Virus record (IMG/VR): IMGVR_UViG_3300023174_000042 | Span: 62,001-126,000 of that record | Reading direction: 5' to 3' (one strand) | DNA length: 64,000 nucleotides | Shown here: positions 161-57,387 of the stretch, one piece after another | Layout: each line of letters starts with the position of its first letter | Numbering within the stretch: position 1 is the first letter of the stretch | The notes under the pieces: model-generated | Database searches by the model: none | What the model saw: only the letters and a program-made list of their open reading frames with translations | What the model was told of the DNA's origin: nothing | Program-made: the position numbers and the translations under genes

Positions 161-1963
161 ATGGCTTGTAGTGGTTTAGGTTTATTTGCGGTGGACACTA
201 GTCCAAATTATTCTTTGTGTTTTTCAGCACGAACAAGTCCCGTTTATGGGACTACATTAGGTTTAGGTAATTATCTTTATATCGATTCTGGATGCACTTT
301 CGCATATTCAACATCTTATTTAAGTGATGGTTCTAATATATATGTGACAAATGGACTTGGAAAAATTACTGAAATTACTGCCTGTGCTTGTAATTTCTTG
401 GGAACTTTCGCATCAGCATCAGACCCAAATTTATCTTGTATTTCTCCTTTGCTTTTTGATCTTTGGGGTCCAGGATTACTTGTTGGAAATGTGGTATACA
501 TTGACTCAGGTTGCACCACCCCTTCCACTAATACTTTTTATTCAGATGGAGTTACAATCTATGAAGTTGATTCATCAGGAACGATATTGTCAATTTCTAC
601 TTGTTCTTGTCCTGGTATTTTTTGTGTTCAAAATGATTCAAATTACGATGATACATATGTATATGCCGGAATGTATGGATCTTATACTTATTATACAGGT
701 CAGACAAACGGATATTCTATCTTTTATTCTACTGGTGAAACAAGATGGTGCTTGGCTCAAAATCTTGGGGATCCTTGTAATCAATTTGGTCCATATGGGA
801 GTGTTTCAACTTGTCCCGATTTAGATGATAGTGTTGTTTATTATGGTTCTTGTATAACAACCACAACGACCACAAATCCGTGTGTGGATTTTAATTTTGA
901 AGCGATTTTTGATTGTTATATTCCACCAACACCAAGTTTTAGTCCGACACCAACACATACACCAACGCCGACACCAACGCCAACAACTTCAAACATTTGT
1001 GGAGGAGTCTCTATGGTAGTTACATCAACCAAAGTTACTCCAACACCAACACCATCTTATTCTCCCACACCTACCCCAACACCTCAAGTTGAGCGTCCTT
1101 GTAATTTTTCGGGTGAAGTTGTGTTTAATACATTTTCCGAAATTATACAATGTGCTAATAGTAAAAAATTCCGTGATTGCTTTACAGGTATTGAATACTT
1201 TACTTCAGATCTCGTATTGGTTTCGGGATCAACGTCACCTAAAGAAAACTACGTTTATAACGCAACTATCAATGGATTAAATTATTGTGTAATTTATGAT
1301 GGTCTATTTGAAAATATCAGTGGTGTTGATAACATTACTTTAACAAATGAAGTAGGTTCTGCTATGGAAGGGTCTTGTTTAGAGTGTGTGCCATCTCCTA
1401 AAGAACCTGTAGCACAATGTTTGGTTATTCATGGAGAATGTGGCACAAGTAATGTAAGTCCAAACGTATTTATAAACGGCAAATTATCTTATATTTGGAG
1501 TTTTAGTTCATATCCTGCGGTATATAGAATATATTGGGATAATTTAAACGTAAGGTGGGTTGCTGAAAATTACGGAACAAACGTTTCTGGATCATATTTG
1601 TATAAGGACACTCAACTTCCGATTGGTTCAAGTATGGAGTGGGTTGATAATCCAAACCATGGTCCTGATGAAACTTGTTTGACTCAAAGCGTTGGATTTT
1701 ATACAACAGTGTTAGATGTTCCTTGTCCTACACCATCAGCAACACCAACACCAACGCCCACACCAAGTCCATGTGTTTCTAGTCAATATAGAATAACAAA
1801 TATTAGTCCTTCAAAAATTACGGCCAAATATTTTGACTGTGTAAAAGGTATGTTGTCAGTTTCAATAAGTCCAAATTCTTCTTTGATATTATGTTCAACA
1901 ACTACACCATCGACAGCAAACCCACAGAACTTACAAATCACAAACTTAGGAACTAGTTGTTAA
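161..1963 (+). CDS. Cys-rich, Pro/Thr-linker virion surface (fibre/adhesin-like) protein, 600 aa
   Basis: Two tandem ~73-aa repeats (LG.F...C...YIDSGCT...SDG..IY...G.I..I..C), a poly-Thr run, three PTPT tracts, many Cys; no catalytic motif. Confidence 0.65.
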   Translation: MACSGLGLFAVDTSPNYSLCFSARTSPVYGTTLGLGNYLYIDSGCTFAYSTSYLSDGSNIYVTNGLGKITEITACACNFLGTFASASDPNLSCISPLLFDLWGPGLLVGNVVYIDSGCTTPSTNTFYSDGVTIYEVDSSGTILSISTCSCPGIFCVQNDSNYDDTYVYAGMYGSYTYYTGQTNGYSIFYSTGETRWCLAQNLGDPCNQFGPYGSVSTCPDLDDSVVYYGSCITTTTTTNPCVDFNFEAIFDCYIPPTPSFSPTPTHTPTPTPTPTTSNICGGVSMVVTSTKVTPTPTPSYSPTPTPTPQVERPCNFSGEVVFNTFSEIIQCANSKKFRDCFTGIEYFTSDLVLVSGSTSPKENYVYNATINGLNYCVIYDGLFENISGVDNITLTNEVGSAMEGSCLECVPSPKEPVAQCLVIHGECGTSNVSPNVFINGKLSYIWSFSSYPAVYRIYWDNLNVRWVAENYGTNVSGSYLYKDTQLPIGSSMEWVDNPNHGPDETCLTQSVGFYTTVLDVPCPTPSATPTPTPTPSPCVSSQYRITNISPSKITAKYFDCVKGMLSVSISPNSSLILCSTTTPSTANPQNLQITNLGTSC

Positions 1964-2018: not shown

Positions 2019-2624
2019 TTATTCCCAAATTTCTTTATATTTCATAAATCCTAAAACACAGGTGTATGCATCTGTTTGATCAAAATTTTCCTTTTTAAGG
2101 GTGTTGTTTTTTGTATATAACCATTTTATCTGTGGTTCAAGTTTTGCGACTTTTTCCCAAATAACCATTTTTTTATCAACATCCTTTGGCATTCCACCAA
2201 ACAACACAAACTTTTTTTTGTCGTTCTCTTGAACTAACTCGGGAAAAGCATACTTTCGTGAATTGTATGTAGAAATAAATTCAGGAACAATTCCTAAAAT
2301 ATTATATATTTCTTTAAATACAAAACTATTAAAACGTAATAATGTTTGAATTGTATAAACATTGTTGGAATTAAGTAGGGGTTCTTCTATTATTACTCTT
2401 ACAATACCCAAAGTTTTATATTCTTTAAGTTTTTCTCCAAATATTTCAGATTTTAATAAAAGTTCTTTTATTTTATCATCATCACTATCAGTTTTTGGTC
2501 TTGGTGAAACATGTGTTAATTCGAGTAGCTCTTTTGTTTTAATATCAAACAGAGCCCATCCTATTGTTCGAGTGGAAATATCCAATCCTAAGACTTTGGG
2601 AGAATTTTTGAAGTTTTTTGCCAT
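2019..2624 (-). CDS. ruvC: RuvC-like Holliday junction resolvase
   Basis: RNase H-fold motifs VLGLDISTRTIGWA, IIEEP, and C-terminal DQTDA acidic pair; 201 aa. Confidence 0.75.
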   Translation of the reverse strand: MAKNFKNSPKVLGLDISTRTIGWALFDIKTKELLELTHVSPRPKTDSDDDKIKELLLKSEIFGEKLKEYKTLGIVRVIIEEPLLNSNNVYTIQTLLRFNSFVFKEIYNILGIVPEFISTYNSRKYAFPELVQENDKKKFVLFGGMPKDVDKKMVIWEKVAKLEPQIKWLYTKNNTLKKENFDQTDAYTCVLGFMKYKEIWE

Positions 2625-2679: not shown

Positions 2680-5178
2680 TTAAAAGTCCAACTTAATAAC
2701 ATATTGTTGTATCCCTTGTCTTAACACAGGTGATTGTAATTTTGACATAACAAGAATATCATCATTTTCATCCAAAAGCGCAATTTCTGTTACATAAGAT
2801 TTTGTTCCAAATGTCCATGTTGGGTTTTGAGAAACCAAAAACTCATTTGAAGATAGATTGATTTTATACTTCATTTCGTAGATTGTTGCCTGAATGTCTG
2901 TTTCTAAGTTGCCGTAGAAATAATATTCGTCACCAAAATTAAGGTTTGTTCCTGTGTCTCCTTTTGGAACCAAAGAAATGTAATCATTCAAATTATAATA
3001 AGGTGCTGATGAATAATTTTCTGAAGTAATGGTAAATGTGGTTGCCGTTAGTGATTCTTGTGTGACATAACCATTTACAAAAAATTGACTCGCTTGTTCT
3101 GTAAAATCAATTATTTTCCAGTTATCCGCAATAGGTCTTTGACCAAGAGGAACTTTTTGTGCCAATACCTGAAATTGATTAGCATAAAATCCAGCAGGAA
3201 CAACACAAGTCGGACAAGATGTTGTTGTTGTGGTTGTATATGGATTTGTTGTTGTTGTGGTTGTTGTGTTTGGAAAATAAGTTGTTGTTGTTGTCGTTGG
3301 TGAATATCCAGGTTGTACTAGACAAGGAAAATCTCCTCCAAATCTAACTGCAACATTTTTTGGTGTGCTTGGGCTACAAACATTTTCTGTTCCCACGACA
3401 CTTGTATAATAATTACAATGAAGTGAGTTGGTAAAGAAATATGAATTTGATAATCTATATGTGACCCAAAGAGTTTCACCACCACCAGTTAAAACTCCTG
3501 TTGTATTTGAAGTTCCACAAGTGTTTGGTGTTAATAAAGACACTTGAGGTGCCGGTAACGTCCAATTTCGATTTGACTTGTATGAAAGTGCCGCAACAAT
3601 TTCTTCGTCATCAATAATAATCAATTTAGAGTCTGGATAAACTTTTCCTATTCTACTTGGAAGTCCGTTTGGTTGTGGAAATGTATCCCAAAGATTGTAA
3701 TATCTCAAACCAGGTTTATTCATGTTTGAGGACACGTTTGATTTTGTGTATTGAACTTGAAATAAATTTTTTCCATCAAATCCTGGTGGATCAACATAAA
3801 ATGTTTGACCAAAACAACATTCGGGGTTTTTATGCCACATCAAAGTTGGAATATGTAGTTTGAAGTTTCTTGCCTGCCCTTGTGTGTTTTCAGGATTTTG
3901 ATTATCGTATGGTTGTAACGCAAATTTTTCTCCATAAAAGAAATCAATTGTTTGATTTGTATAATGAATAATAGCAATAGCCTTTTGATCTTGTGGTGTT
4001 ACAACTTGTTTTTCACCAAAAGAGTTATAATAATAAACATCATCAGTCGATGTTTGAGCACTTGTGGTGTAACCAAAATATTCTTTTTGACCTATATAAT
4101 TTATAGACCCGAAATTTGTGTAGTCTTGAAATTGATTTGATATTAAACCCGCAGGACTTTCAGTCCACGGAATATTCATATTCCAAATTTTAACATCAAA
4201 TTGGTCTGTATCACAAACAGATTCAAAATCAATAACACTTTGAGCCCAATGTGGTTCAGGAGTAAAACTATCATACAAAGGAACCATCTGTGGTGGGTAA
4301 ATTAAAGTTCTAGCAACACAATCACTTGCTAAGTTTGTAAAATCGGGCGTTGGTCTATCTAATGTTAACTTATTATTACAAACAGAAATAATTCTATAAG
4401 TCAAAATTGAAAAACAACTTACAACATCTTTCAGACAATCAGGTGGTGGTGGTAAAGGACATTGAGCGCTTGGTGTTGGTGTTAAACAAGGTGTATGTGT
4501 TGGTGAAGGAGTTGGTGTTGGTGACGCACAAGGTTCACTATTTGTCGATGATGGTGTTGGGGTGGGTGTTGGTGTTTGATTTACAGATGCGGTTGGTGTT
4601 GGTGTTGGGAAATTAGAACAAGAACAATCTGTTTTTGCTCTTCCGTCGTAATAAATTGTTATAAAATCCCCTATTTGCGGTGTGTTGTTATTTTGAACAT
4701 TACAATCCAATCTATAAACATTAATTTCATTTGTCCCATTCAAAGTGGACATATTTACAACGTAGTTTGGTGTGACAACATATTGATTATTTACTAAAGC
4801 TTTCCAATCTACAGTTGATGCTGTTGTGTTTCCTGTAAAAAATCCTCTCATTGCCGCCCTATTAAAAACAGATTCTATTTGTGAATCCATAAAAGGAATG
4901 CCATAAATATTTGTTTGTCCTTGATCAACCAAATACGGGTATTTAATATATTGTCTATTTGATTCTGGAACACCTGAACTATTTTGTGAATTAAATTGGG
5001 GTTCTAAAACAACCGTATTAGATTGATTATAAGTTTCGGGTAATTCGTTGTAAGAAATCTCACTATCACCAATAGCAAAATATGCTATGTTGAATCTACC
5101 TTCAGATAGTCTTTGTCTTCCCGTGTCAGTAACTCGGGTATTTACCAAACCTGATGTATTTTTAATTATATATGCCAT
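2680..5178 (-). CDS. Baseplate/tail-fibre attachment protein (tail-collar DUF3751-like ends) with a large Cys/Thr/Pro-rich insertion
   Basis: N-terminal TRVTDTGRQRLSEGRFNIAYFAIGD and C-terminal YVTEIALLDENDDILVMSKL resemble the two halves of tail-collar fibre N-domains; internal PTPT and TTTTTT tracts; located in the tail operon. Confidence 0.55.
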   Translation of the reverse strand: MAYIIKNTSGLVNTRVTDTGRQRLSEGRFNIAYFAIGDSEISYNELPETYNQSNTVVLEPQFNSQNSSGVPESNRQYIKYPYLVDQGQTNIYGIPFMDSQIESVFNRAAMRGFFTGNTTASTVDWKALVNNQYVVTPNYVVNMSTLNGTNEINVYRLDCNVQNNNTPQIGDFITIYYDGRAKTDCSCSNFPTPTPTASVNQTPTPTPTPSSTNSEPCASPTPTPSPTHTPCLTPTPSAQCPLPPPPDCLKDVVSCFSILTYRIISVCNNKLTLDRPTPDFTNLASDCVARTLIYPPQMVPLYDSFTPEPHWAQSVIDFESVCDTDQFDVKIWNMNIPWTESPAGLISNQFQDYTNFGSINYIGQKEYFGYTTSAQTSTDDVYYYNSFGEKQVVTPQDQKAIAIIHYTNQTIDFFYGEKFALQPYDNQNPENTQGQARNFKLHIPTLMWHKNPECCFGQTFYVDPPGFDGKNLFQVQYTKSNVSSNMNKPGLRYYNLWDTFPQPNGLPSRIGKVYPDSKLIIIDDEEIVAALSYKSNRNWTLPAPQVSLLTPNTCGTSNTTGVLTGGGETLWVTYRLSNSYFFTNSLHCNYYTSVVGTENVCSPSTPKNVAVRFGGDFPCLVQPGYSPTTTTTTYFPNTTTTTTTNPYTTTTTTSCPTCVVPAGFYANQFQVLAQKVPLGQRPIADNWKIIDFTEQASQFFVNGYVTQESLTATTFTITSENYSSAPYYNLNDYISLVPKGDTGTNLNFGDEYYFYGNLETDIQATIYEMKYKINLSSNEFLVSQNPTWTFGTKSYVTEIALLDENDDILVMSKLQSPVLRQGIQQYVIKLDF

Positions 5179-5207: not shown

Positions 5208-7283
5208 TTATATTATTGGTGGAACAGGATTTAATTTTGGATTATTTAAAATAACTTGACAACAATTACAATTACTAACCACAGGATTTGACATAAAAAG
5301 GTTGTATGATCCTAATGCCTTTTCACAAGACCCAGTTGGATTATTTATAATACTTGATGTTGTTGATCCTGTAATTACTTGTCCGCTACTAAATGTTAGA
5401 GTATTTGAATATGTTTTACTTGTTTGAACAACCGTTATTGGAAAATCAGCGGTGCAAGGACCCGATAATGGAACTGTGCCTGACGTGGTATTTACTAAAG
5501 TCATAGGTGTTGTTCCGTTGATTGTTGTTATATTGTTGTATGTTGGCACAGGACTTAAAGTACTAGGATAATAACTAAAAGTTGATGTCATGATTAGATT
5601 TAATGAAATTGTAACTCCACTAGGAAGAACGGGTGCGGTTATTGAAAAAGTTCCATTATTATAATTTACGTTCAATGCCAAAGTATATGTTGTGGGAAGA
5701 ATATTATTTACTTGAACTGATGTTAATGACCCTACTGTTGTTTGCGAATCTTTTACAAAAACTGAATATATTCCTGGAATTAAATTGTTAAAAATTGGTG
5801 ATGATTGATAGGAACCTCCACCATTAATCGAGTATTGGTATGGCGGAACTCCCCCAACGGCAGATACCGTAATACTTCCTTTTTGTTCGCAAGCAGCGTC
5901 ATTTACTGAAGCACTTACACTTATTGTATAACTTGTCAAACATTCACCTTGAGCCACGGCCATACTAAACACTTCAGGAGATCCTTGAACTTGCCAATTA
6001 CTTAATGGGGGTGATGTTGGGTCATTATTAATTAAACTAACGTAAGGACTTGAATAACCCGTCATTATCCATTGATTAGGTGTTGATCCTGTGTTCCAAT
6101 AAATAACGTATTGTCCTGTTGATGACGACCAACTTGGTTGTCCGTTTACGTCGTTGCTTGGGTCTAATTGAATTTGTTGACTTTGTGTTGCAACTCCTGG
6201 TTTTGGGCTTCTAACAACTAAAGTAACACATAAACTAGTTAAATCCTTTGGTATTGTTGGAATTTGACATGGTCCAACATAAGATTGTAATAAATAATAT
6301 GGTGAGTCAGAAATGTAATCCCAATCTCCAGTGTCTCCTGACGGATAAAATGTTGTTGTCATCAAATCGTTATAGTTTGATATATTTTGACATTCCAAAG
6401 TTTGACAAAAAGACCAATAGTTTAATTCTGAACTCCAAAAAACATATCCAATTGTTTCAACACCGTATTGAATTTTATAATATGGTTTTCCATTTTTTAA
6501 ACCAGAACTTTCACTATAAACATAAAAAGTCGTTTGATTTGAAACTCCACTAACAGCAAAACACATACCAGACAATGTTAATGTGTCCGCTGTTAACACG
6601 CATGTTGTGGTGGCAGTAAAATCACCATAATAATCTGTTACTGTTGCTTTATATTGTCCTACACCTAAATTTGTAAGAGCGGGAGCAAAACTACCTACTT
6701 CCCAAAAAATTGTGTATGGTGGTGTTCCTCCTGTTACAATCAAAGTTGTTGATCCATCAAAACTCTTATCATTTGTTGGCTGTAAAGTTAAACATTCAAT
6801 TGTCATGGGGAAAATAGTAATAACATCACATTCATTTGGTGGTTTTACTGTTGGTATTGTTGGTGGACACTGATTGTTTTGACAAATATCAGTTAATTTA
6901 ATTGGTATTTGAGTTTCTGTGTCAAATTGTGGAAATACTTTACTACAAATATTATATGTTTGCCCTTCTTGAATCGTGTCCACAACTATGGTGTCATTAC
7001 AATCAACATAAGTGACATCTGTTGTCTGAGTTGCCGATCTAATAAAATAACAATAACACTGACAAACACAAGTTGTTCCAGTATTAACATCTATGTTATA
7101 AGTTGGGGAACATTCCATCTCACCCAAACTTAAAACATAAAAACAAGTGTCAGGAGTTTCACCTAAGTCTATAATGTCTATTGAAACAAAAGTTTCTGAA
7201 TAAGCACTTAATCCACTAAAGTTTGAAACAATAGGGTCATAACTTCCGTCACAAGAATATAATATGTAGCAATTTTCAATCAT
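5208..7283 (-). CDS. Cys-rich SprB-repeat virion adhesin-like protein
   Basis: SprB-type units DGSTTLIVTGGTPPYTIFW...LGVGQYKATVTD and KGSITVSAVGGVPPYQYSING...FNNLIPGIYSVFVKD. Confidence 0.65.
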   Translation of the reverse strand: MIENCYILYSCDGSYDPIVSNFSGLSAYSETFVSIDIIDLGETPDTCFYVLSLGEMECSPTYNIDVNTGTTCVCQCYCYFIRSATQTTDVTYVDCNDTIVVDTIQEGQTYNICSKVFPQFDTETQIPIKLTDICQNNQCPPTIPTVKPPNECDVITIFPMTIECLTLQPTNDKSFDGSTTLIVTGGTPPYTIFWEVGSFAPALTNLGVGQYKATVTDYYGDFTATTTCVLTADTLTLSGMCFAVSGVSNQTTFYVYSESSGLKNGKPYYKIQYGVETIGYVFWSSELNYWSFCQTLECQNISNYNDLMTTTFYPSGDTGDWDYISDSPYYLLQSYVGPCQIPTIPKDLTSLCVTLVVRSPKPGVATQSQQIQLDPSNDVNGQPSWSSSTGQYVIYWNTGSTPNQWIMTGYSSPYVSLINNDPTSPPLSNWQVQGSPEVFSMAVAQGECLTSYTISVSASVNDAACEQKGSITVSAVGGVPPYQYSINGGGSYQSSPIFNNLIPGIYSVFVKDSQTTVGSLTSVQVNNILPTTYTLALNVNYNNGTFSITAPVLPSGVTISLNLIMTSTFSYYPSTLSPVPTYNNITTINGTTPMTLVNTTSGTVPLSGPCTADFPITVVQTSKTYSNTLTFSSGQVITGSTTSSIINNPTGSCEKALGSYNLFMSNPVVSNCNCCQVILNNPKLNPVPPII

Positions 7284-7300
7284 CTAATAGTTATAAATAA

Positions 7301-8281
7301 TCAAATTTCGTATTTTTTAATATAAGATTTCATATTCTCAATATATTTAATTGTTGAACTCTTAACATCAACATAGTCAAAGTGATTAGGAGTTTCTTTA
7401 AGTTTTGTTATTGGGTCAATATTAATATAATCCCCTTTATAAAATTTTGTAGTTTTAAGGTTTTCTGTGACTCCTGCCATGTGTAATATTGGTTTAGAAT
7501 TATAAACATCAATTGAGTCTGTTGCCCAAGAAAAATCCAACTCTTTTGTTATTTTTGTCTGATGATTATACAACCACAAATTCCAAAGAACCGACCACAT
7601 TTCGGCTGTCCAAAATTGTATTTCCCCTGGAGATATTGGAAATTTTTTTTGGTATGACATCATTCTATCATAAAGTTTAATAGAATCTTTATAGATCTTA
7701 TCCCACAACTCACAACTTGTGTTTTTTAAAAGGTATTGACCACCACCAGAATTTTCTTGGTTTAACTTTATTGTTTCAACATCAATACCAATAACTTCAG
7801 CCATTTCTTTTATCAATTGGCCTTTTTCTGAAGACGGATAGCGATTTTCATATCTATCACAACAATCCATAATATAATTATATCCAATATATCCAATGGT
7901 ATCAGATAGATAATTTACATCATCATTTAACAACCGATCAAAGCTCGGTAGTTCTCTAAAAATAATATCAGCATCATGTAAAAAAAATAATTCACCAAAT
8001 TTTGCTTTTGATTGAATCCATTTTGAAATTAAATATGGTTTTATTGACGGGATGTAATGTTTTTTTACTCTTTGGTCAACAAAATAATGAATATTTATAT
8101 TTAAGTTTTTTAACTCTTCAGATTCTTTTGATGGTTTTGTTTTTCCTTGGACAAGTCCTAAAACAACGTGAATTTGATTTGGCTTGATCCCTTTTTCAAT
8201 AAAATTATTTACATATAATTTAATTTGCCAAATAAAGTATGGAACGTCAGGTTGTGCAGAAACAAATAAAATTTCTTCCAT
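7301..8281 (-). CDS. GT-A fold glycosyltransferase resembling plant peptidyl-serine galactosyltransferase (GT96)/hydroxyproline arabinosyltransferase (GT95)
   Basis: Ordered motifs YFIWQ, Y-x4-KP-x5-W-x-Q, LHDADIIFR (DxD), GYIG, GGGQYLL, WTAEMWS, PILHMAG. Confidence 0.7.
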   Translation of the reverse strand: MEEILFVSAQPDVPYFIWQIKLYVNNFIEKGIKPNQIHVVLGLVQGKTKPSKESEELKNLNINIHYFVDQRVKKHYIPSIKPYLISKWIQSKAKFGELFFLHDADIIFRELPSFDRLLNDDVNYLSDTIGYIGYNYIMDCCDRYENRYPSSEKGQLIKEMAEVIGIDVETIKLNQENSGGGQYLLKNTSCELWDKIYKDSIKLYDRMMSYQKKFPISPGEIQFWTAEMWSVLWNLWLYNHQTKITKELDFSWATDSIDVYNSKPILHMAGVTENLKTTKFYKGDYINIDPITKLKETPNHFDYVDVKSSTIKYIENMKSYIKKYEI

Positions 8282-8315
8282 ACTTTAATTATATGAAAAA
8301 CTTAAAACAAGTGTA

Positions 8316-8540
8316 TTATGAGGTGCAGTTAATTGTTTCAATTTTTTCACATCCATTATCTTTGATTAATTTTAATCCTATCGCAGGGGCGGTGTTGAAT
8401 TGAATTGGTAGTGTTATTGTTGTTGGTAAACTGCTAATTATTCCAATATAAGAACATTGATTTCCATATACATCACAACAATATCCACTAAATGGGGTTG
8501 TTAAACCTGAAATGCTATTTATTGTTACTTGATTTGCCAT
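8316..8540 (-). CDS. Small Cys-containing beta-rich protein (74 aa), paralog of ORF 1-159
   Basis: CCDVYGNQCSYIG...LP...KLIKDNGC; tightly packed between neighbouring genes. Confidence 0.7.
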   Translation of the reverse strand: MANQVTINSISGLTTPFSGYCCDVYGNQCSYIGIISSLPTTITLPIQFNTAPAIGLKLIKDNGCEKIETINCTS

Positions 8541-8543
8541 AAC

Positions 8544-10730
8544 TTAAGAACACGAAACACAAGATATGTCAAAATCAATAATTAGATTTACAGTTATCTG
8601 TGTATCTTGTAAGGGGTTTATAGGTTCAATTTTACACCCTTTTGGTATGTCTTCGCAGGTTGTTTTGATTGTAATTCTATTTGAAATAATATCAACTGTT
8701 GTTCCTGATATTCCCAAAAAAGAATCTAATGTATTTGAAATTGTTTGTGCCCAAAGCGAATCACTAGGGTAATCTGTCGCTCCAGTTGAGACAAAAAATT
8801 GGGTTTGAGCAGACTGCGACCCAACTTGTGCAAATATTGAAAAAGTTGCTTCATTTATAATACAATTTGTATCTCCACTTGTAAGATCAGAAAATCCTTC
8901 CAAATACATAGATCTTATGTCTCTTTTGGTTATACTTCCACTATCTTTAAAAGTATTTTCACAAATATTATAATATCTGTAGTCGCTATATTTTTTTGTC
9001 CCTGACAATTTAATACTTTTAGTTAACGTGCAACCACTAGCATCCGTTATGGTTAATGAATATTTTCCAGAGGTTAAACCTGTTATTGTAGATCCTGTTT
9101 GTCCTGAAACACTTCCACTCCAACTTAAAGTAAATGGTGGTTCACCCGATGTAATAATTGTTGTTATTGACCCGTCATTTCCGTTAAAAGGCTGATTGGG
9201 GTAAAGGTTAAAAAATACGCTTTGACTATAATTAATGTAAACTGGAAAAGATTGAATACAAGCCGGAGATCCTGAGTCCTGCACGGTAAGAACATAATTT
9301 CCATATTTAAGATTTGTAAATGTTCCAATCGGTGTGGTTAATGAAACGGGCGCGTAAGATGGTCCAACTAACGTAAATAAATAAGGTAATGTCCCTCCAG
9401 TTGACACTAAAACTTGTAATACCCCATTACTAGACCCACAAGTCGTTCCTGTTGTTGATGCGGTTACAGTAAATAAGTTAACAGAAGTTATATTTGTAGT
9501 TGCGGTATAAACGCAACCTATTGTTTCTACTGAAATTAAATAAGTTCCGTTTGGTAATCCGTAGAACGTTTGACTTGGGTTTCCTAATGTTCCAATTTGT
9601 TGCGTTCCTGTTGATCCTGATACCGATATCAACAAACTTGGTTCAGTAGCAAGACCATTATCAATAATTACTTGAATTGTTCCATCGTTTGCAGAACAAT
9701 TTGATGGTGTTGTGTTAATCGCAACGGTGCTAAAAGAATTTGGAGTTATCAAAGAAACAGAATCATAAATTGTGCAAAGTCCTGAATCGGTAACCAAAAA
9801 ACTATATCCTCCAGACGAAAGTCCAGTGAAAATAACCGATTGGTTAAAAGTTATATCAACTTGACCTGATGATCCGCTAAAAAAATACGGAGCAGTTCCT
9901 CCTGTTATTATAAATTCAACAACTCCGTCATTAGAAAAACAAGTTGGTTGAGATATTGTAATGAATCCAGCGGAAGTTAATGCTCCCACAGAATTTACAG
10001 TAAATGAATTTGTTGTTGTGCAATTATTAGGATCTGTTATGGTTGCCAAATAAACGCCACTTGTTAATCCTGTTACGGTTGTTCCTGTTTGTGATCCAAC
10101 ATTCGGAGACCAAGTTATTGTATATGCCGATACGGGTAGTGTTAATCCTGTTATAAATATTTTTCCACTTGGGGTCCCTATACAACTTCCGTCGTCAACA
10201 ACGTATGCTCCAAATGTTAGTCCCGTTGATGGAGTTAAAATAACAGATGCTGTAATTCCTGTGCAACCCCCTCCGTCATTAGCAACAATATAATATGTTC
10301 CTGCCGATAAACTTGTAAAAGTATAATTTGAGTTTGGTGTTGTTGCAGAACTTATATAGTTATCGTCCCCATCGTAAAGTGTAAATGTTGCCGTGCCATA
10401 AACTCCTGATGTAAATCCTGTAACTTCACCATTATCTAAACCACAACTTGTATTTAATGAATCAATAGTGGCGGTTGTTCCTGATGATATATAAACGGAT
10501 TGTAAATAAGAATTAGAAGCACCATCAACAATTTGTAAGAAATAAGTTCCTGCAGATAAACTTGTTGCCGAATAACTTAAAGTGGCCGCTGATGTTGGTA
10601 ATGGACATCCAGAAGTAATACAAGTAATTGCAAATGGGGGTGTAGATCCTGTAATATTAAAAGACACACTCCCTGAATTTGTATTACTACAATCTCCAGT
10701 TACGTTTAGGTTATATATTGATATACTCAT
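8544..10730 (-). CDS. SprB-repeat adhesin-like structural protein (about 7 repeats)
   Basis: Repeated C-x3-(D/N)G.I....GG..PY..W.....TGL..G.Y...(V/I)TD..GC units, e.g. DGSITTIITSGEPPFTLSWSG...TGLTSGKYSLTITDASGC. Confidence 0.8.
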   Translation of the reverse strand: MSISIYNLNVTGDCSNTNSGSVSFNITGSTPPFAITCITSGCPLPTSAATLSYSATSLSAGTYFLQIVDGASNSYLQSVYISSGTTATIDSLNTSCGLDNGEVTGFTSGVYGTATFTLYDGDDNYISSATTPNSNYTFTSLSAGTYYIVANDGGGCTGITASVILTPSTGLTFGAYVVDDGSCIGTPSGKIFITGLTLPVSAYTITWSPNVGSQTGTTVTGLTSGVYLATITDPNNCTTTNSFTVNSVGALTSAGFITISQPTCFSNDGVVEFIITGGTAPYFFSGSSGQVDITFNQSVIFTGLSSGGYSFLVTDSGLCTIYDSVSLITPNSFSTVAINTTPSNCSANDGTIQVIIDNGLATEPSLLISVSGSTGTQQIGTLGNPSQTFYGLPNGTYLISVETIGCVYTATTNITSVNLFTVTASTTGTTCGSSNGVLQVLVSTGGTLPYLFTLVGPSYAPVSLTTPIGTFTNLKYGNYVLTVQDSGSPACIQSFPVYINYSQSVFFNLYPNQPFNGNDGSITTIITSGEPPFTLSWSGSVSGQTGSTITGLTSGKYSLTITDASGCTLTKSIKLSGTKKYSDYRYYNICENTFKDSGSITKRDIRSMYLEGFSDLTSGDTNCIINEATFSIFAQVGSQSAQTQFFVSTGATDYPSDSLWAQTISNTLDSFLGISGTTVDIISNRITIKTTCEDIPKGCKIEPINPLQDTQITVNLIIDFDISCVSCS

Positions 10731-16631: not shown

Positions 16632-18420
16632 CGGCCGCTGGATCTGCTATCGTTGTTATGTTTATAGGAACCGCTCCCGTTTGAGCATAATCGCTTGGTA
16701 TATTGTAATTTTCTGGTGTAACTCTAAATATTGTGTTTGTAAACGGATAATGGGAATCATTTAAAAAAGGAAAATCAACACCAACTCCATCGGTGTCAAT
16801 AAACCCATAAGGATATAAATCTCTCCATCTAAAAAGAGCGTTCATTGTGGAATAATATGCGTAATCAGGTATTCCCACAACATTTATTGAACTTCCTTCT
16901 TCTATGTAATCAGAAAAAGCTCTAATTTGAATTGGGCTATGTGGTTGATAAAAATAACCATATTGATTGTTTGGTGTTAAAGTTGTTGCTGATAAACTAA
17001 ACCAATTTTCATTGTATGTTATTTTATGTTGATATAAGGAAATTACCCTTTCTAATTGCTCAAAGTTATTCCACTCACAATAGTCTCCGTCTATTGTATC
17101 TCCTGTGTTTAATAGTTCGTTATAAAAAAATGGTCCTTGATTTGTTAAAGAAGTATATTGATTTTGAATTATGCTTGTATTAGAATCAGGATTATTTTGA
17201 TCCCACCAAATTTGTGGTTTTGTTTGATCTAAATATGTATTAAAATACCAACCTTGTTTTAATTTTTGTGTCCAACCAAAATAACCTCTCCAAACTGTTG
17301 TAAAAAATAATTCACTAACGGGTCTGTTTTCGTTATCCAATAAATCAAGAATATCAACATCACAATTAAAAGATAAAGTATATGATCTTGCACCTTCTTT
17401 AACAGATGTCCTACGTGTTTGATTTGGTGTTAATGACTTTATTTCACACTTAGTTTTATTGTTATAGATATTTTGTTCGAATCCCGCATTTACCAAAACC
17501 GCACATTCGGGTTTAGTTAATATTTTATGTTTTCTAACATAATATTTACTAATCGTATCGGCAGAATTTGCCAAATTTATAACCCTTTTGAAAGTTCCTT
17601 GTGTTAAGGTTAAAAATGTGTTTCCTGTATAACCAACATTTCTAATATTAAAGATGTATTCATCTGACCCCGATGAAGGGTCACCCAAACTTGTTACCTG
17701 AAAAAATTGATTTCCATTGTAGTTGGTCGATAATTGAACAAATTCTCCAACAGATAAACCATGCATAACTGGGCATTTAAAACTTATAATTCTTGTTGTT
17801 TGATCGCTTCCAACTATCACAAAATATGGAAGTCCGTCTGAAGCAACCCAATTCCAAGAAATATTTGTATTTGGTTGAACTGTATAAAGATTTTTGTTAT
17901 AATCATTTTGATATACATAACTTATGTAATGGGACCAGTTGTATGTTGTTGCGCTAACGGATTTGAAATCTAAGTGTCTTCCGTTTCCGATTGTATACCC
18001 CAATACGTCAAAATCAGTTCTTATAAAATCAAATTCGGGATATTGGGGAAATCCATCCCAAGCCGCGTTTTGATTTGTTGGTTGTGGTGGGACTGATGGA
18101 TTATTTCCAGAAGGGTAATAGGAAATTGCGTTTGCTACCGCATTTGTGTAATATAAATTATCTCTAAACGGAGGATAAATCGTAGATCCTGTATAAGCAT
18201 TTTCAAATATAACGGTATATTTGGTTACAGGTCTAAATATTGTAGATTGTTGTCTTTCATCATCAAAAACTGTAACCAAGTTTAAATCAACACTTCTATC
18301 AAATTCAATAATTTCTTTATTACTTTGAGCAAAAGGAACATTAATAAACTGATCTGTTTTTGGGGCTCCTTTATATCTTTGAGTTGATAAAATAATATTT
18401 GTTGTTGGGTCTACTATCAT
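16618..18420 (-). CDS. Hypothetical structural protein (600 aa)
   Basis: ORF with ATGA overlap to the upstream gene; aromatic and beta-rich composition. Confidence 0.6.
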   Translation of the reverse strand: MIVDPTTNIILSTQRYKGAPKTDQFINVPFAQSNKEIIEFDRSVDLNLVTVFDDERQQSTIFRPVTKYTVIFENAYTGSTIYPPFRDNLYYTNAVANAISYYPSGNNPSVPPQPTNQNAAWDGFPQYPEFDFIRTDFDVLGYTIGNGRHLDFKSVSATTYNWSHYISYVYQNDYNKNLYTVQPNTNISWNWVASDGLPYFVIVGSDQTTRIISFKCPVMHGLSVGEFVQLSTNYNGNQFFQVTSLGDPSSGSDEYIFNIRNVGYTGNTFLTLTQGTFKRVINLANSADTISKYYVRKHKILTKPECAVLVNAGFEQNIYNNKTKCEIKSLTPNQTRRTSVKEGARSYTLSFNCDVDILDLLDNENRPVSELFFTTVWRGYFGWTQKLKQGWYFNTYLDQTKPQIWWDQNNPDSNTSIIQNQYTSLTNQGPFFYNELLNTGDTIDGDYCEWNNFEQLERVISLYQHKITYNENWFSLSATTLTPNNQYGYFYQPHSPIQIRAFSDYIEEGSSINVVGIPDYAYYSTMNALFRWRDLYPYGFIDTDGVGVDFPFLNDSHYPFTNTIFRVTPENYNIPSDYAQTGAVPINITTIADPAADECE

Positions 18421-29039: not shown

Positions 29040-29041
29040 AG

Positions 29042-29076
29042 AACCTCCCATTTATTTAATAAATATCTGGGAGGTT
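29042..29076 (-). promoter_or_regulatory. RBS-sequestering hairpin with a late promoter in its loop
   Basis: AACCTCCCA (29076-29068) pairs with TGGGAGGTT (29050-29042); loop contains TATTTAT (29065-29059). Confidence 0.8.
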
Positions 29077-54036: not shown

Positions 54037-57000
54037 TTAGATATTTTCAAACGACGCTCCTGTTGGAGTGATGTAGAAAGTAATATCAATAAATTCAAGA
54101 GCTCTTGTAGGTTTGATATAGATTTTTCCTGTTAATTGGTTTCTATCTAAATCTTCAGGAGAAGACGAAACGGTTACACGGAAGTCATATAAACCACGGT
54201 CTCTTCTAATGGCATCCAAGATAGGATTAACAGCGTTTAAGAAGTCTTGTCTAACTTGTGCGTCATTTTGTTCAAACAACAATCGAATAGATACTGCAGA
54301 AATCAATTTACGTGCTTGTAATAACAATCTTCTTACGTTAATTCTGTCAAGGGCCGACTCTCTAATTTGTAGAGTTTTGTTACCCCAAATTACAGTTCCC
54401 ACATCAGAGAAAGTAGCAATTGGGTTAATTCTACCAACATAAAGGATATCTCTGTCTTCTTGAGTTAGTTTCTTACGTGCTTTAATACAATTAACAATAC
54501 CACGAGTGTAACCAGCCGCCGCAAACCAAGGGAACGCGATGTTGTCTGTTAATGCTAAGTTTCTTGTAACTTCAGCCGTAGGTGGAATATAAATTTGGGT
54601 ATTATTCACACTATCTCTTGTTAACACCCAAGGATAATAAGTTGCCGTGTAGTTTGAGTCAATTCCTGTATTATCCAAGTTATTAACCGCCTCTGTAGGA
54701 TAAATGAAACCATCTATACCTGTAGTTGTTGGTAAATATAAGTCATAGTCAGGTGTCGTACAAACATAAAGTGAATCGGCTCTATTGAACTCAATCATTT
54801 GAACTGCGTCTTCAACTAAGTTACTGTTGTTTACATAGTCAATACCAGGTGTTACAAAAACGTTGATGTTTGTTGCTTCAGGATTGGCAAAAGTTTGTTG
54901 TCCTAATAAGTAAGCGTAATAGTCGGTATTTGCAAAATTTTGTGTTCCGTCGCCTAATGATATTTCTTTAAATGCACCCCAACCAACCGCAGTTGGATAT
55001 CTCGGTGAAGGACAAGCACCATTTAAGAAACCTCTTCTACCAATTTGGTATTCGTCAGTATTGGTTCTCCATTCTCTGTAAATATCCCATCCATCAAATC
55101 CACCTTGAACTAAGAATGTGAATTTACGTGCGAATAATCTGTAATAAACATTTGTAGGTGATTCAGGTTCTGTAATGAAAGATGAATTACCACAAACAAA
55201 TCTTGGTTCGCCACTTGTAGAGAACTCAGGTCCGATTGTAAGTCCACTGGCATTTACGTCCATGTGGAACCCTTCAGATCTGAAATTGAAAGGTAATCCT
55301 TCTATATCACAAGAATTAATTGGGTTTCTTTTTCCAACATACTCAAAGAATGATGGATCCCATCCATAAGAATTTGAAATACCTAAGTAAACTCTTCTTA
55401 CATTGTCACCAGGACTTGTAAGAGCATTATCATTTCCGGAAGACAAACCAAAAGGTGGGTTGTAAATTACTTCACCAGGGAAGTCATATTTCCCTTTGAT
55501 AATTGGGAATGGTGAATTAGCACCTGCGTAATTTCTAAAGTTAAACCCGTTAAACCCACAAGGGAGTGTGTCAATTGGAGCATCTTCACTCATTTCTACC
55601 ATTACATATTTTGAGTTAAGCATATATTCCCCATTTAGGGTTCCAATTTTATTTCCAATAAAATTGTTTTGACCCGGATCCATACCGCAGTTAGTGAATT
55701 TTTCTAAAACAACAGGGTTTGAATCAGTGTCAAAGTAATCACGAATTAAAACATCAAATGTTAAATTGTTATATGATTGATTAACAATTGAAATTTTAAT
55801 CAATGTGTTTGCTGCGTCACCGTCAGAAATTGTGTAAAATCTAAATAGGTCATAAACTTTATTACCCCTTAATTCTGAAACAACAAATGGAGATACTGGT
55901 GTTTGCCATTTATCTAAATACCAACCAATTGAATTTGGATCACCGCTTTGTGCCGAATCAAGAGCAATTAAATTAGGATTTAAACCTCTAATATAACCCT
56001 TCTTCCAAGAATAATTTAACCAAGATTGGAAGTTTTCTTCAGCAAAGACAGGAACTTCAATTCTAGGTTTTTGAAAGTTAGTAACTCCAAATACCTTAGT
56101 CCAATATTCAGGATCATTTTGTGTAAAAGAAGTTTCAAATGAGTAGTGAGTTCCAAAGTGGTCAACAACATTTACACCAAATGTGGAGTAAGGGTTTTTC
56201 AATACTGCTGAGTATTGACCGGTCATGTTAAGAGTGACATCTGATGTCCCTGTTACTGAATATTTTGGATTAGTAGCGTTTGTATAAGTCGAAATACCCC
56301 TTGATCTTAAAGTTCCTACAACTACATTGTCGTAATTTACATATGATGTTCCGGTATAGTAATAAATTTTACCAACAATCGTTCCTGAATAACAATCAAT
56401 ATTAACAGGAGTTGGTGTTGGAGTTGGGGATGTAAACGGTGAAGGTGTAATACAAGGATTTACAAATGAAGGAGTTGGTGTTGGAGATGCTGTTGCTTGT
56501 GGTGTTGGTGTTGGGTTTGGATAATAAGGTGTCAAACCTGAAACGTAAGTAAAGAATGAGTAACCACTATAGTGAGTATTTCCTGTATTTGTGAATAAAG
56601 CATAATACCAAGCATCATTTAATGGTGAAGTTAAACTTGTATCGTCAAGTGAAACTGAAGGAACATTAAAGACGTTAGTTGCTGCTGTCCATCCAGCACC
56701 TTCTAAAGTATTATAATCCATAGTATCTATTGAACCAAAATATGAAATATATTCATCTTCTGCCATATATGGATTAGAATCTGTTATTACATCAAAAATT
56801 AAATTTCTAATTTGTGAATCCAAGGTCGACGTTGATCCATTGAATTGTTCAAATTGAGAATAAAGAATGTCTTGAATTTCATCTGGAAAATCAGCATTGT
56901 ATCCAATTGTTGTCACAGAATTTGTACAAGCGGTAAAAGGAACTGTAAATGCCAATTCTTTAGGAGTAACACAAGTAGTTTCACAAGTTGTATAATCTGT

Positions 57001-57387
57001 AACTGAACTTAAACACCAAACACCAATAGTTGATGGGTTTACGTTAGCCACAGTTGTTACAGACCAAGATGGTCCTGCGTCATAACCCGATAAACCAAGG
57101 ATTCTTGTAACAAATAATTGATTAGATTGTTGCAAGTATGCTTTAGCGATATAAGATGCTTCATATTTAGGAATTTGAGTGTTTACAAATTTTTCTGGTG
57201 AAGTCCCACCAAACACCGTTTCAAATTCCGTGAAATTTGTTATAAAAATAGGTTCGAAAGCCGGACCTATTAAAGTTTCACCAACAATACCTAATGTAGT
57301 TACACCAACACTTTGAGCCACAAAGCTTAGGTCAACTTCAGAAGTATACACACCGGGCGAAACAAAAACCTTACTGTTAGTTGCCAT
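54037..57387 (-). CDS. Tail sheath protein (gp18-like) with a large insertion, 1116 aa
   Basis: SPGVYTSEVDLS, FGGTSPE, ATYYPW, PWFAAAG..RG, INPI, VIWGNKTL...DRINVRRL, IKPTRALEFI. Confidence 0.93.
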   Translation of the reverse strand: MATNSKVFVSPGVYTSEVDLSFVAQSVGVTTLGIVGETLIGPAFEPIFITNFTEFETVFGGTSPEKFVNTQIPKYEASYIAKAYLQQSNQLFVTRILGLSGYDAGPSWSVTTVANVNPSTIGVWCLSSVTDYTTCETTCVTPKELAFTVPFTACTNSVTTIGYNADFPDEIQDILYSQFEQFNGSTSTLDSQIRNLIFDVITDSNPYMAEDEYISYFGSIDTMDYNTLEGAGWTAATNVFNVPSVSLDDTSLTSPLNDAWYYALFTNTGNTHYSGYSFFTYVSGLTPYYPNPTPTPQATASPTPTPSFVNPCITPSPFTSPTPTPTPVNIDCYSGTIVGKIYYYTGTSYVNYDNVVVGTLRSRGISTYTNATNPKYSVTGTSDVTLNMTGQYSAVLKNPYSTFGVNVVDHFGTHYSFETSFTQNDPEYWTKVFGVTNFQKPRIEVPVFAEENFQSWLNYSWKKGYIRGLNPNLIALDSAQSGDPNSIGWYLDKWQTPVSPFVVSELRGNKVYDLFRFYTISDGDAANTLIKISIVNQSYNNLTFDVLIRDYFDTDSNPVVLEKFTNCGMDPGQNNFIGNKIGTLNGEYMLNSKYVMVEMSEDAPIDTLPCGFNGFNFRNYAGANSPFPIIKGKYDFPGEVIYNPPFGLSSGNDNALTSPGDNVRRVYLGISNSYGWDPSFFEYVGKRNPINSCDIEGLPFNFRSEGFHMDVNASGLTIGPEFSTSGEPRFVCGNSSFITEPESPTNVYYRLFARKFTFLVQGGFDGWDIYREWRTNTDEYQIGRRGFLNGACPSPRYPTAVGWGAFKEISLGDGTQNFANTDYYAYLLGQQTFANPEATNINVFVTPGIDYVNNSNLVEDAVQMIEFNRADSLYVCTTPDYDLYLPTTTGIDGFIYPTEAVNNLDNTGIDSNYTATYYPWVLTRDSVNNTQIYIPPTAEVTRNLALTDNIAFPWFAAAGYTRGIVNCIKARKKLTQEDRDILYVGRINPIATFSDVGTVIWGNKTLQIRESALDRINVRRLLLQARKLISAVSIRLLFEQNDAQVRQDFLNAVNPILDAIRRDRGLYDFRVTVSSSPEDLDRNQLTGKIYIKPTRALEFIDITFYITPTGASFENI

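What the first reader, a model, noticed from the sequence alone, without database searches (positions are those of the whole stretch)
7301..8281. Plant-extensin-type O-glycosyltransferase embedded among mucin/extensin-like virion genes: candidate phage virion O-glycosylation system
Seen: a 326-aa GT-A protein with ordered motifs YFIWQ / YIPSIKP...WIQ / LHDADIIFR / GGGQYLL / WTAEMW / PILHMAG inside the fibre operon. It has a TATAAT box upstream (8288-8293), and a TATTTAT motif restarts transcription right after it (7293-7299). Known (recalled): Arabidopsis SGT1 (GT96) has YFDWQ / YPAINKP...WLQ / ILDADMIIR / WISEMY / PVLMHYG and adds Gal to Ser in extensin Ser-Pro repeats; HPAT (GT95) is related. 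Seen: neighbouring structural proteins carry SPTPTPTP, PLPPPP and TTTTTT tracts (161-1963, 2680-5178, sheath 56405-56525). Inference: the phage glycosylates its own tail and fibre linkers, for protease resistance, stiffening of stalks, or shielding.
Basis: partly seen in the sequence, partly recalled or inferred. Interest (0 to 1): 0.9.

Follow-up and report, generated by a model that had tools for sequence, protein, structure and literature searches.

The report
Phage glycosyltransferase paired with poly-threonine virion proteins
A so-far unnamed phage enzyme with a sugar-transferase fold sits, in hundreds of unrelated phages, right beside capsid, tail or fibre proteins that carry runs of threonine. 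This suggests that many phages, not only mycobacteriophages, sugar-coat their own particles.

Summary
The ORF at 7301-8281 (-) is real, 326 aa, with the motifs as listed. It has no Pfam, NCBIfam or PADLOC hit and belongs to phrog_4417 ('unknown function'). A confident AlphaFold model (pLDDT 95) is a GT-A fold closest to retaining GT24/GT6/GT8 enzymes. D103-x-D105 and H267 are invariant, and there is no membrane segment.

The decisive evidence is comparative. In 43 of 49 bacterial species genomes, and in 76 of 76 Enterococcus-type prophage loci, the gene just upstream encodes a structural protein ending in a poly-Thr tail. Homologous tail proteins in phages without the gene lack that tail.

In this jumbo-phage lineage, the 832-aa fibre protein has Thr runs in 66 of 70 loci that carry the gene. 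It has none in 5 of 5 syntenic loci that lack it, although the Pro-Thr linkers persist in all.

Best reading: a cytoplasmic Thr O-glycosyltransferase that modifies poly-Thr tracts of virion proteins. No chemistry has been shown.

PT linkers as acceptors and the promoter calls are not. The plant GT96 link could not be tested here.

The enzyme is not homologous to the known mycobacteriophage virion glycosyltransferases, so this is a new variant of a known kind.

The parts
7301..8281 (-). Glycosyltransferase gene (326 aa), GT-A fold, phrog_4417; DxD at D103/D105, conserved H267
2680..5178 (-). 832-aa fibre-like structural protein, two genes downstream; the most likely acceptor in this phage
3220..3303 (-). 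Poly-Thr insert of the 832-aa protein (aa 626-653: SPTTTTTTYFPNTTTTTTTNPYTTTTTT), encoded by (ACA/ACC)n; candidate O-glycosylation site
   Evidence: present in 66/70 relatives with the GT, absent in 5/5 syntenic relatives without it
4444..4593 (-). Pro-Thr/Pro-rich linker of the 832-aa protein (aa ~196-245); conserved whether or not the GT is present, so probably not GT-dependent
161..1963 (+). 600-aa Cys-rich structural-type protein with a T6 run (aa 233-238) and three PT tracts; second candidate acceptor
5208..7283 (-). 691-aa SprB-repeat protein directly downstream of the GT; Thr/Ser-rich (24%) but no Thr run in this window. Its homologue carries runs of five or more Thr in 31 of 76 related loci
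8316..8540 (-). 74-aa Cys/Thr-rich ORF directly upstream; missing together with the GT at the syntenic site in the relatives whose flank spans that site (L266, L279, L280), with paralogues elsewhere in those loci
8544..10730 (-). 728-aa SprB/Ig-like repeat structural protein upstream (fibre/baseplate block)
54037..57387 (-). Tail sheath (1116 aa) with a TSPTPTPTP linker at aa 319 (about 56407-56433); PT only, no Thr run

Best explanation
The gene encodes a soluble, cytoplasmic, metal-dependent (DxD) GT-A glycosyltransferase of an unannotated family (phrog_4417).

During late infection it most likely takes a host nucleotide-sugar and O-glycosylates threonine (and serine) side chains in the disordered poly-Thr tracts of the phage's own structural proteins, before or during assembly. 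In this phage the target is the Thr-run insert of the 832-aa fibre protein and probably the T6 run of the 600-aa protein. In siphovirus relatives the targets are the C-terminal poly-Thr tails of the major capsid and major tail (tube) proteins.

The result would be a mucin-like, hydrated and protease-resistant glycan brush on exposed parts of the virion.

Shown here: the fold, the conserved catalytic-type residues, the absence of a membrane anchor, the synteny and the covariation. Inferred: the transfer reaction, threonine as acceptor, the donor sugar, the stereochemistry (retaining, judged from the fold neighbours), and the benefit to the virion.
For: Fold. The AlphaFold2 model has pLDDT 95.1 and pTM 0.93. 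The best PDB matches are retaining GT-A enzymes: UGGT catalytic domain, ABO GTA/GTB, XXYLT1, glycogenin and LARGE1 (E about 1e-6, TM 0.45-0.5). In BFVD the best matches are two family members, then viral glycosyltransferases, several annotated GT8.

Conserved residues. D103, D105 and H267 are invariant in alignments A1 and A2. In the 91 long family representatives the two Asp are again invariant and the His is at least 90% conserved. There is no hydrophobic segment (maximum KD19 0.86).

Synteny. In cultured phages of Enterococcus, Staphylococcus, Clostridium, Lacticaseibacillus, Lactobacillus and Chryseobacterium, the homologue directly follows a capsid, tail or other protein bearing a Thr tract. 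In 76 of 76 IMG/VR Enterococcus-type loci the upstream neighbour ends in a run of at least five Thr, against about 0 of 74 at positions -5 to -2 and +1 to +4. In 49 different bacterial species, 43 upstream neighbours carry such a run (42 of them C-terminal), against 2 of 236 at flanking positions (Fisher p = 6e-42). A second tailed protein appears at the capsid/tail distance.

Covariation. Tail-protein homologues at about 40-60% identity in Streptococcus Javan phages, Pediococcus cIP1, phiJL-1, SPP1 and Aeromonas AS1 have no GT in the loci examined and no Thr tail. In the jumbo lineage the fibre protein has runs of five or more Thr in 66 of 70 loci with the GT and 0 of 5 loci without it (p = 7e-6).

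Fusions. Partners are second glycosyltransferase domains (Glyco_transf_7C x9, GT2 x3, GT6, GT25) and Methyltransf_24. GT2, GT25 and Methyltransf_24 are the Pfam families found in the Che8 virion-glycosylation genes gp108-110.

Cellular contexts. Family members also sit in lanthipeptide/RiPP clusters or are fused to radical-SAM/SPASM domains, that is, in peptide-modifying settings.
Against: There is no biochemical or mass-spectrometric evidence for any member. No paper in the searched library treats this family.

Fold neighbours mostly act on glycans, and a fold cannot assign an acceptor.

The association is not universal. Four loci of one Bacteroidota-type group (L169-171, L183) and two GC-rich MAG loci (L292, L293) show no Thr tract nearby.

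The five GT-less jumbo relatives are also the most divergent, so phylogeny confounds that contrast. A GT copy elsewhere in those genomes could not be excluded, because the scan was truncated.

In this window the Thr-run protein is two genes away rather than adjacent. No nucleotide-sugar pathway gene is in the window.
Confidence: 0.7

Rival explanations
1. One reading: the enzyme is an extensin-type Ser/Pro-motif glycosyltransferase whose acceptors are the SPTPTPTP/PLPPPP linkers of the tail, fibre and sheath proteins.
For: PT linkers are present in three structural proteins of the window. The GT8-like fold is compatible with GT95 being described as GT8-related (PMC4908140).
Against: PT linkers are conserved in syntenic relatives that lack the gene, while only the Thr-run insert is lost. 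The partners in Firmicutes phages are Pro-free Thr/Ser tails. SGT1 needs hydroxyproline next to Ser (PMC4908140), and nothing here suggests prolyl hydroxylation. The protein has no membrane anchor.
Confidence: 0.1
2. The protein binds or otherwise modifies the Thr tails without making a simple O-glycoside. It could be a sugar-phosphate or other nucleotide-activated group transferase, or an assembly factor that has kept a GT-A fold.
For: The same synteny and covariation as for the main model. GT-A folds support several transfer chemistries (general knowledge). Acceptor and donor are untested.
Against: The invariant DxD and conserved His, and the repeated fusion to second glycosyltransferase and sugar-type methyltransferase domains, fit glycan building best.
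Confidence: 0.1
3. It modifies a host cell-envelope glycan (teichoic acid, O-antigen, capsule), for superinfection exclusion or serotype conversion.
For: Phage GT-A enzymes that alter host surface glycans exist (general knowledge). Many family members are in prophages.
Against: The gene lies inside late structural operons, between tail protein and chaperones or between capsid and connectors. It is also present in lytic and jumbo phages. There is no membrane segment and no flippase or GtrA/B-type partner nearby. This model does not explain the Thr-tail covariation.
Confidence: 0.05
4. It glycosylates phage DNA (a hypermodified base) to evade restriction.
For: DNA glycosylation is the classic role of phage glycosyltransferases, and it is one option raised for jumbo-phage GTs (PMC12619734).
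Against: The gene has a conserved position next to Thr-tailed structural proteins and not in DNA-metabolism modules. It is present in small 36-39 kb temperate phages. It is also found in lanthipeptide clusters. No structural hit to DNA glycosyltransferases appears among the top matches.
Confidence: 0.03

Closest known systems
Mycobacteriophage virion glycosylation (Che8 gp108-110, Corndog, Myrna; Freeman et al. 2023, as summarised in PMC12363180, PMC11256854, PMC12619734)
   Same: Both have phage-encoded glycosyltransferases that (there shown, here inferred) decorate the phage's own capsid and tail-tube subunits at C-terminal extensions. The accessory domain families overlap: GT2, GT25 and Methyltransf_24 are found in Che8 gp108-110 and as fusion partners of this family.
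   Different: The enzyme is not homologous (hhalign probability below 1% against gp108, gp109 and gp110). Here the gene sits inside the structural operon next to its presumed substrate, whereas the Che8 genes lie near the right genome end. The acceptor here is a near-pure Thr run. In this jumbo phage the tracts are internal to fibre proteins rather than at capsid or tube C-termini. No glycan has been demonstrated.
Retaining GT-A glycosyltransferases of CAZy GT8 / GT24 / GT6 (glycogenin, XXYLT1, LARGE1; UGGT; ABO GTA/GTB)
   Same: The overall fold matches (Foldseek E about 1e-6, probability 1.0, TM 0.45-0.5). A DxD lies after a beta-strand, and a conserved His lies in the C-terminal half.
   Different: Sequence identity is 8-12%. 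No Pfam GT model matches any of 46 members, and no sequence-profile hit to PDB was found. The presumed acceptor is a peptide Thr run.
Plant GT96 SGT1 (Ser alpha-galactosyltransferase) and GT95 HPAT1-3 (Hyp arabinosyltransferases) of extensins
   Same: Those enzymes are peptide O-glycosyltransferases acting on extended low-complexity repeats. GT95 is described as GT8-related and related to GT96 (PMC4908140, PMC8012813), and the fold neighbours here include GT8. That is a lead, not a test.
   Different: The plant enzymes are membrane-anchored ER/Golgi proteins, and SGT1 needs hydroxyproline-flanked Ser (PMC4908140). This protein is soluble and tracks Thr runs, not Ser-Pro motifs. Homology could not be tested because no plant sequence was reachable.
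Glycosyltransferases of RiPP clusters (glycosylated lanthipeptides, glycocins)
   Same: Family members occur beside LanB, LanC, a lanthipeptide precursor and a C39-ABC exporter. Others occur beside radical-SAM/LanC-like genes or fused to radical-SAM/SPASM domains. This points to peptide substrates rich in Ser, Thr and Cys.
   Different: Those are cellular loci with two-domain proteins of 580-760 aa. The window's protein is a single domain in a virion gene block.

Membership tests
GT-A fold nucleotide-sugar glycosyltransferase | Single Rossmann-like alpha/beta/alpha domain matching solved GT-A enzymes | tested here: met
   AlphaFold2 model with pLDDT 95.1. 220 PDB matches at E<=1e-3, and the 50 listed are essentially all GT-A enzymes.
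GT-A fold nucleotide-sugar glycosyltransferase | DxD metal/nucleotide-binding motif after a beta-strand, conserved across the family | tested here: met
   D103 and D105 are invariant in 8, 46 and 91 sequences. Strands E98-101 and E106-108 flank the motif.
GT-A fold nucleotide-sugar glycosyltransferase | Glycosyl transfer activity | not testable with these tools
   Needs an enzyme assay or virion mass spectrometry.
phrog_4417 (phage protein family of unknown function) | Full-length match to the family profile | tested here: met
   E = 6.5e-65, residues 6-319 against profile positions 3-290 of 293.
CAZy GT96 (SGT1) / GT95 (HPAT) | Sequence or profile homology to SGT1/HPAT catalytic domains | not testable with these tools
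   No plant sequence or AlphaFold DB library was available. No Pfam family of any kind matched 46 members. A text search for the motifs found nothing useful.
CAZy GT96 (SGT1) / GT95 (HPAT) | Membrane-anchored ER/Golgi enzyme | tested here: not met
   No hydrophobic segment (maximum KD19 0.86). The model is globular from residue 5.
CAZy GT96 (SGT1) / GT95 (HPAT) | Acceptor is Ser/Hyp in Ser-Hyp4 type repeats | tested here: not met
   Partner proteins carry Thr runs, not Ser-Pro4. PT linkers do not covary with the gene. This is indirect evidence only.
Mycobacteriophage virion glycosylation system (Che8 type) | Glycosyltransferase homologous to Che8 gp108, gp109 or gp110 | tested here: not met
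   hhalign probability 0.06-0.18%.
Mycobacteriophage virion glycosylation system (Che8 type) | Acceptors are terminal extensions of major capsid and tail-tube subunits | tested here: inconclusive
   Relatives of this gene pair with C-terminal Thr tails on capsid and tail proteins. In this window the tracts are internal to fibre-type proteins. Modification itself is untested.
CAZy GT8 | Match to the Glyco_transf_8 sequence family | tested here: not met
   No Pfam hit at E<=10 for any of 46 members. The similarity is at fold level only.

The most novel reading that the evidence does not exclude
phrog_4417 may be the viral/bacterial branch of the same clan as the plant peptide O-glycosyltransferases GT95/GT96.

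It would define a very widespread two-part module, a poly-Thr tail or tract plus an adjacent glycosyltransferase. Through this module, phages of Bacillota, Bacteroidota, CPR bacteria and freshwater jumbo phages would build mucin-like O-glycan brushes on capsids, tails and fibres.

The same enzyme would be reused by bacteria to glycosylate lanthipeptides.
Probability: 0.3. Interest if true: 0.85.

Novelty: new variant of a known kind. Interest (0 to 1): 0.75.

Why it matters
Virion glycosylation in phages has so far been demonstrated only in mycobacteriophages, where it changes antibody recognition.

The family described here has more than 1000 clusters at 50% identity, and every public copy examined is named 'hypothetical'. 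It occurs in prophages and lytic phages of Enterococcus faecalis, Staphylococcus, Lactococcus, Lactobacillus, Clostridium and Listeria, and in abundant freshwater jumbo phages.

If it does glycosylate Thr tails, several things follow. Glycosylated virions would be common. A simple sequence signature (Thr tail plus this gene) would predict them. Cryo-EM densities, particle stability, mucus and host adhesion, and the immunogenicity of therapeutic phages would need re-reading. A new peptide O-glycosyltransferase with a minimal acceptor tag (Thr-n) would also become available.

Cultured phages carrying the gene exist, so the question is directly testable.

Tried and rejected
Family libraries. Pfam on the protein, on 46 diverse members and on 91 long members gave no hit to the GT domain itself. 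NCBIfam gave only noise. PADLOC gave nothing.

PDB by sequence gave nothing, either with the single protein or with a profile.

Che8 comparison. hhalign against the three Che8 glycosyltransferases showed no homology.

Literature. The Freeman 2023 paper itself is not held, so it is cited only through papers that summarise it.

Plant GT95/GT96 link.
- The profile search of 1.84 billion representatives lists only the best 150, and all are strong family members.
- No plant sequence could be fetched by reference.
- Motif strings are not present in the paper library.

GT copy elsewhere in the five GT-less jumbo contigs.

Whether the window's phage belongs to the published 'moraphage' lineage (PMC12619734) could not be checked.

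Promoter claims were rejected as chance-level.

My first Thr-tract criterion (at least 9 S/T in 10) was too strict and missed tails such as TTTTTTKPTTTTTTT. It was replaced by 'at least 5 consecutive Thr'.

Full report
OBSERVATION.

The ORF at 7301-8281 on the minus strand is real: ATG start, 326 aa, with the listed motifs in the stated order. Its neighbours do carry low-complexity tracts. The 600-aa protein (161-1963, +) has a T6 run and three PT tracts. The 832-aa protein (2680-5178, -) has two PT tracts and three Thr runs (T6, T7, T6). The 1116-aa tail sheath (54037-57387) has one TSPTPTPTP linker but no Thr run. With 8.6% Thr in the window's 19,660 residues, about 0.08 runs of five Thr are expected by chance.

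The gene lies downstream of a Baseplate_J gene (24051-25892) and between SprB-repeat proteins, so 'inside the fibre/baseplate block' is correct.

The promoter statements are not more than chance. The strings exist, but TATAAT occurs 146 times and TATTTAT 55 times in the window. No -35/-10 pair is found at that position, and the region's count is only modestly above its shuffles. The TATAAT is 6 nt from the start codon, and the gaps to the flanking genes are 34 and 17 nt.

WHAT THE PROTEIN IS.

No Pfam, NCBIfam or PADLOC model matches it, or matches any of 46 diverse relatives. It is a full-length member of phrog_4417, 'unknown function' (E = 6.5e-65). All named public copies are 'hypothetical protein', or at most 'prophage pi2 protein 34'.

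An AlphaFold2 model built on a 46-sequence alignment is very confident (pLDDT 95.1, pTM 0.93). Foldseek places it among GT-A glycosyltransferases. The best solved matches are retaining enzymes: the UGGT catalytic domain (GT24), the ABO transferases (GT6), and XXYLT1, glycogenin and LARGE1 (GT8). These match at E about 1e-6, TM 0.45-0.5 and 8-12% identity. Among predicted viral structures, the best matches are two family members, followed by viral glycosyltransferases, several of them annotated GT8.

D103-x-D105, H267, Q182, W224 and about fifteen other positions are invariant. In the 91 long family representatives the two Asp are again invariant and the His is at least 90% conserved. There is no hydrophobic segment, so this is a soluble cytoplasmic enzyme.

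The family is large: 1029 clusters at 50% identity with E<=1e-3, and 595 with E<=1e-30. About 60% of the best 150 representatives are 380-790 aa fusion proteins. Where the extra part is recognisable, it is a second glycosyltransferase domain (Glyco_transf_7C in 9, GT2 in 3, GT6 in 1, GT25 in 1), a Methyltransf_24 domain, or a radical-SAM/SPASM module.

THE COMPARATIVE SIGNAL.

In cultured phages the homologue (31-36% identity, 77 records) always sits in the structural module. It lies directly after the major tail protein and before the chaperones and tape measure in Enterococcus phiFL1A, Staphylococcus RQ1 and Clostridium phiCTP1. It lies directly after what is, by position, the major capsid gene in Lacticaseibacillus R3.3, and after a structural-module gene upstream of the tail genes in Enterococcus VPE25. 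It lies after a 134-aa Thr-repeat protein in Lactobacillus LpeD, and after a 429-aa protein with a 24-residue Thr/Ser tract in Chryseobacterium MA9V-3.

In six of the seven phages the upstream neighbour carries a poly-Thr tract, in most of them at or near its C-terminus, for example ...NGTTTTTSTTTTTTSSTTTTTTTQASSK. In VPE25 the Thr tail is instead on the major tail protein a few genes further on.

Systematic counts, using 'at least 5 consecutive Thr':
- In 76 of 76 Enterococcus-type IMG/VR loci the immediate upstream gene ends in such a run. At positions -5 to -2 and +1 to +4 the count is about 0 of 74. A second tailed protein appears at +5 or -6, the capsid-to-tail distance.
- In 49 loci from 49 different bacterial species, 43 upstream neighbours have the run, 42 of them within 15 residues of the C-terminus. 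Flanking positions show 2 of 236 (Fisher p = 6e-42).
- Two of the six exceptions still have Thr-rich tails. A Staphylococcus aureus prophage has (TSTTT)n tails on both proteins, and L313 has a weaker Thr-rich C-terminus. The two GC-rich MAG loci L292 and L293 show none.
- Independent 50%-cluster representatives show the same pattern in an 85-kb phage contig, a 245-kb contig and several short contigs.

PRESENCE/ABSENCE COVARIATION.

(a) Tail-protein homologues at about 40-60% identity to phiFL1A gp50 occur in Streptococcus Javan prophages, Pediococcus cIP1, Lactobacillus phiJL-1, Bacillus SPP1 and Aeromonas AS1. These have no glycosyltransferase next to them. No Streptococcus, Bacillus, Pediococcus or Aeromonas record appears among the 77 GT-bearing phages. 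These proteins stop where the globular part ends, and their longest Thr run is 2-3. Within one genus (Coetzeevirus), R3.3 has the gene and Thr tails on both the presumed capsid protein and the tail protein, while cIP1 and phiJL-1 have neither at these sites.

(b) In the window's own lineage, the 832-aa fibre homologue has runs of five or more Thr in 66 of 70 loci where the gene lies 1-2.5 kb upstream. It has none in 5 of 5 loci with a full 6-kb flank and no gene (p = 7e-6). Three of these loci span the site and keep the order p995 - p728 - [gap] - p691 - fibre - RuvC.

The alignment shows the Thr-run insert (reference aa 626-653) deleted or replaced in those loci. The Pro-Thr linker at aa 196-245 is conserved in every sequence. 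The tract that tracks the gene is therefore poly-Thr, not the PT linker.

Caveats: the five loci are also the most divergent, and a copy elsewhere in those genomes is not excluded (one search was truncated).

MECHANISM (INFERRED).

The protein would be a soluble DxD GT-A enzyme, made with the late structural proteins. It would use a host nucleotide-sugar to O-glycosylate Thr (and Ser) in disordered Thr runs of virion proteins in the cytoplasm, before or during assembly. In the window these are the fibre insert and probably the T6 run of the 600-aa protein. In siphoviruses they are the outward-facing C-terminal tails of capsid and tube subunits.

The single-domain form would add the first sugar. 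The fused or neighbouring GT2/GT7C/GT25/methyltransferase domains in other phages would extend and cap the glycan. The likely effect is a hydrated, protease-resistant, mucin-like brush.

The Thr runs are (ACA/ACC)n repeats, and their length varies between close relatives. The density of sites could therefore drift quickly.

The occurrence of family members inside lanthipeptide/RiPP clusters, beside Ser/Thr/Cys-rich precursor peptides, independently points to peptide substrates.

COMPARISON WITH WHAT IS KNOWN.

Phage virion glycosylation is established for mycobacteriophages Che8, Corndog and Myrna, on capsid and tail-tube C-termini, with effects on antibody binding (summarised in PMC12363180, PMC11256854, PMC12619734). 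The present enzyme is not homologous to Che8 gp108-110. Those proteins are GT2 + Methyltransf_24/TylF, GT2 and GT25, and the same families recur as fusion partners here.

The plant GT96/GT95 assignment could not be tested. GT95 is described as GT8-related and related to GT96, which is compatible with the fold hits. However, the plant enzymes are membrane-anchored and SGT1 needs hydroxyproline. I therefore file the protein as a GT-A enzyme of family phrog_4417, 'works like' a virion protein O-glycosyltransferase, and not as a member of GT96.

VERDICT.

The acceptor is better described as poly-Thr than as extensin-like PT. The promoter calls do not hold, and the plant label is unproven.

Confidence in the protein-O-glycosylation model is about 0.7. 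The novelty class is 'new variant of a known kind'. The window itself is IMG/VR contig 3300023174_000042, 272.6 kb. It may be related to the freshwater 'moraphage' jumbo lineage (PMC12619734), but this was not checked.

Noticed in passing
L287:5001-7271 and neighbours; L194:3825-5573: Two-domain members of the same glycosyltransferase family sit in cellular RiPP clusters. L287 has LanB dehydratase, a LanC-like cyclase, a 65-aa lanthipeptide precursor with a Ser/Thr/Cys-rich core, and a C39-ABC exporter. L194 has radical-SAM and LanC-like genes. One representative is fused to Radical_SAM+SPASM. These may make glycosylated lanthipeptides.
   Followed up: partly
L003:7223-7925 (Staphylococcus phage RQ1): The major tail protein ORF ends in a T7 run. 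An overlapping ORF in another frame encodes about 100 aa of (T7-x3) repeats. This could be a programmed frameshift extension of the tail protein or an annotation split.
   Followed up: no
L005:7578-7982 (Lactobacillus phage LpeD orf68): A 134-aa protein made mostly of Thr/Ser repeats is annotated 'glycoprotein gp2 EHV1', apparently on composition alone. It lies directly upstream of the GT homologue, and a GT2 gene lies about 7 kb downstream.
   Followed up: partly
window 161-1963, 5208-7283, 8316-8540: These fibre-block proteins are unusually Cys-rich for phage proteins made in the cytoplasm (5.2%, 3.9% and 6.8% Cys). This suggests disulfide-stabilised or metal-binding modules.
   Followed up: no
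window 2019-2624 and 28260-29051: A RuvC-like resolvase gene is wedged between fibre genes and is conserved at that place in relatives. A GIY-YIG endonuclease gene lies next to the ribonucleotide reductase gene and is probably a homing endonuclease.
   Followed up: partly
window 3220-3303: The Thr runs are (ACA/ACC)n trinucleotide repeats, and their lengths differ between relatives that are 80-97% identical (T5 to T8). These are likely slippage-prone, fast-evolving tracts.
   Followed up: partly
window 18417-23975, 37121-44170, 44486-49585: Three very large ORFs (1852, 2349 and 1699 aa) have essentially no family match, apart from one faint tail-protein hit. They lie between the baseplate, tube/sheath and replication genes.
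   Followed up: no
L339 (Saccharimonadales MAG) and L289 ('Woesearchaeota' MAG): A CPR-bacterium contig carries the GT directly after a protein ending ...ASTTTTT. A 5-kb contig binned as an archaeon carries a copy 65% identical to the window's and is probably a mis-binned phage fragment.
   Followed up: no
L169-L171, L183; L292, L293: Some family members have no Thr tract within two genes: one Bacteroidota-type phage group and two GC-rich Myxococcota/deltaproteobacterial MAG loci. Their substrates, if any, are unknown.
   Followed up: no
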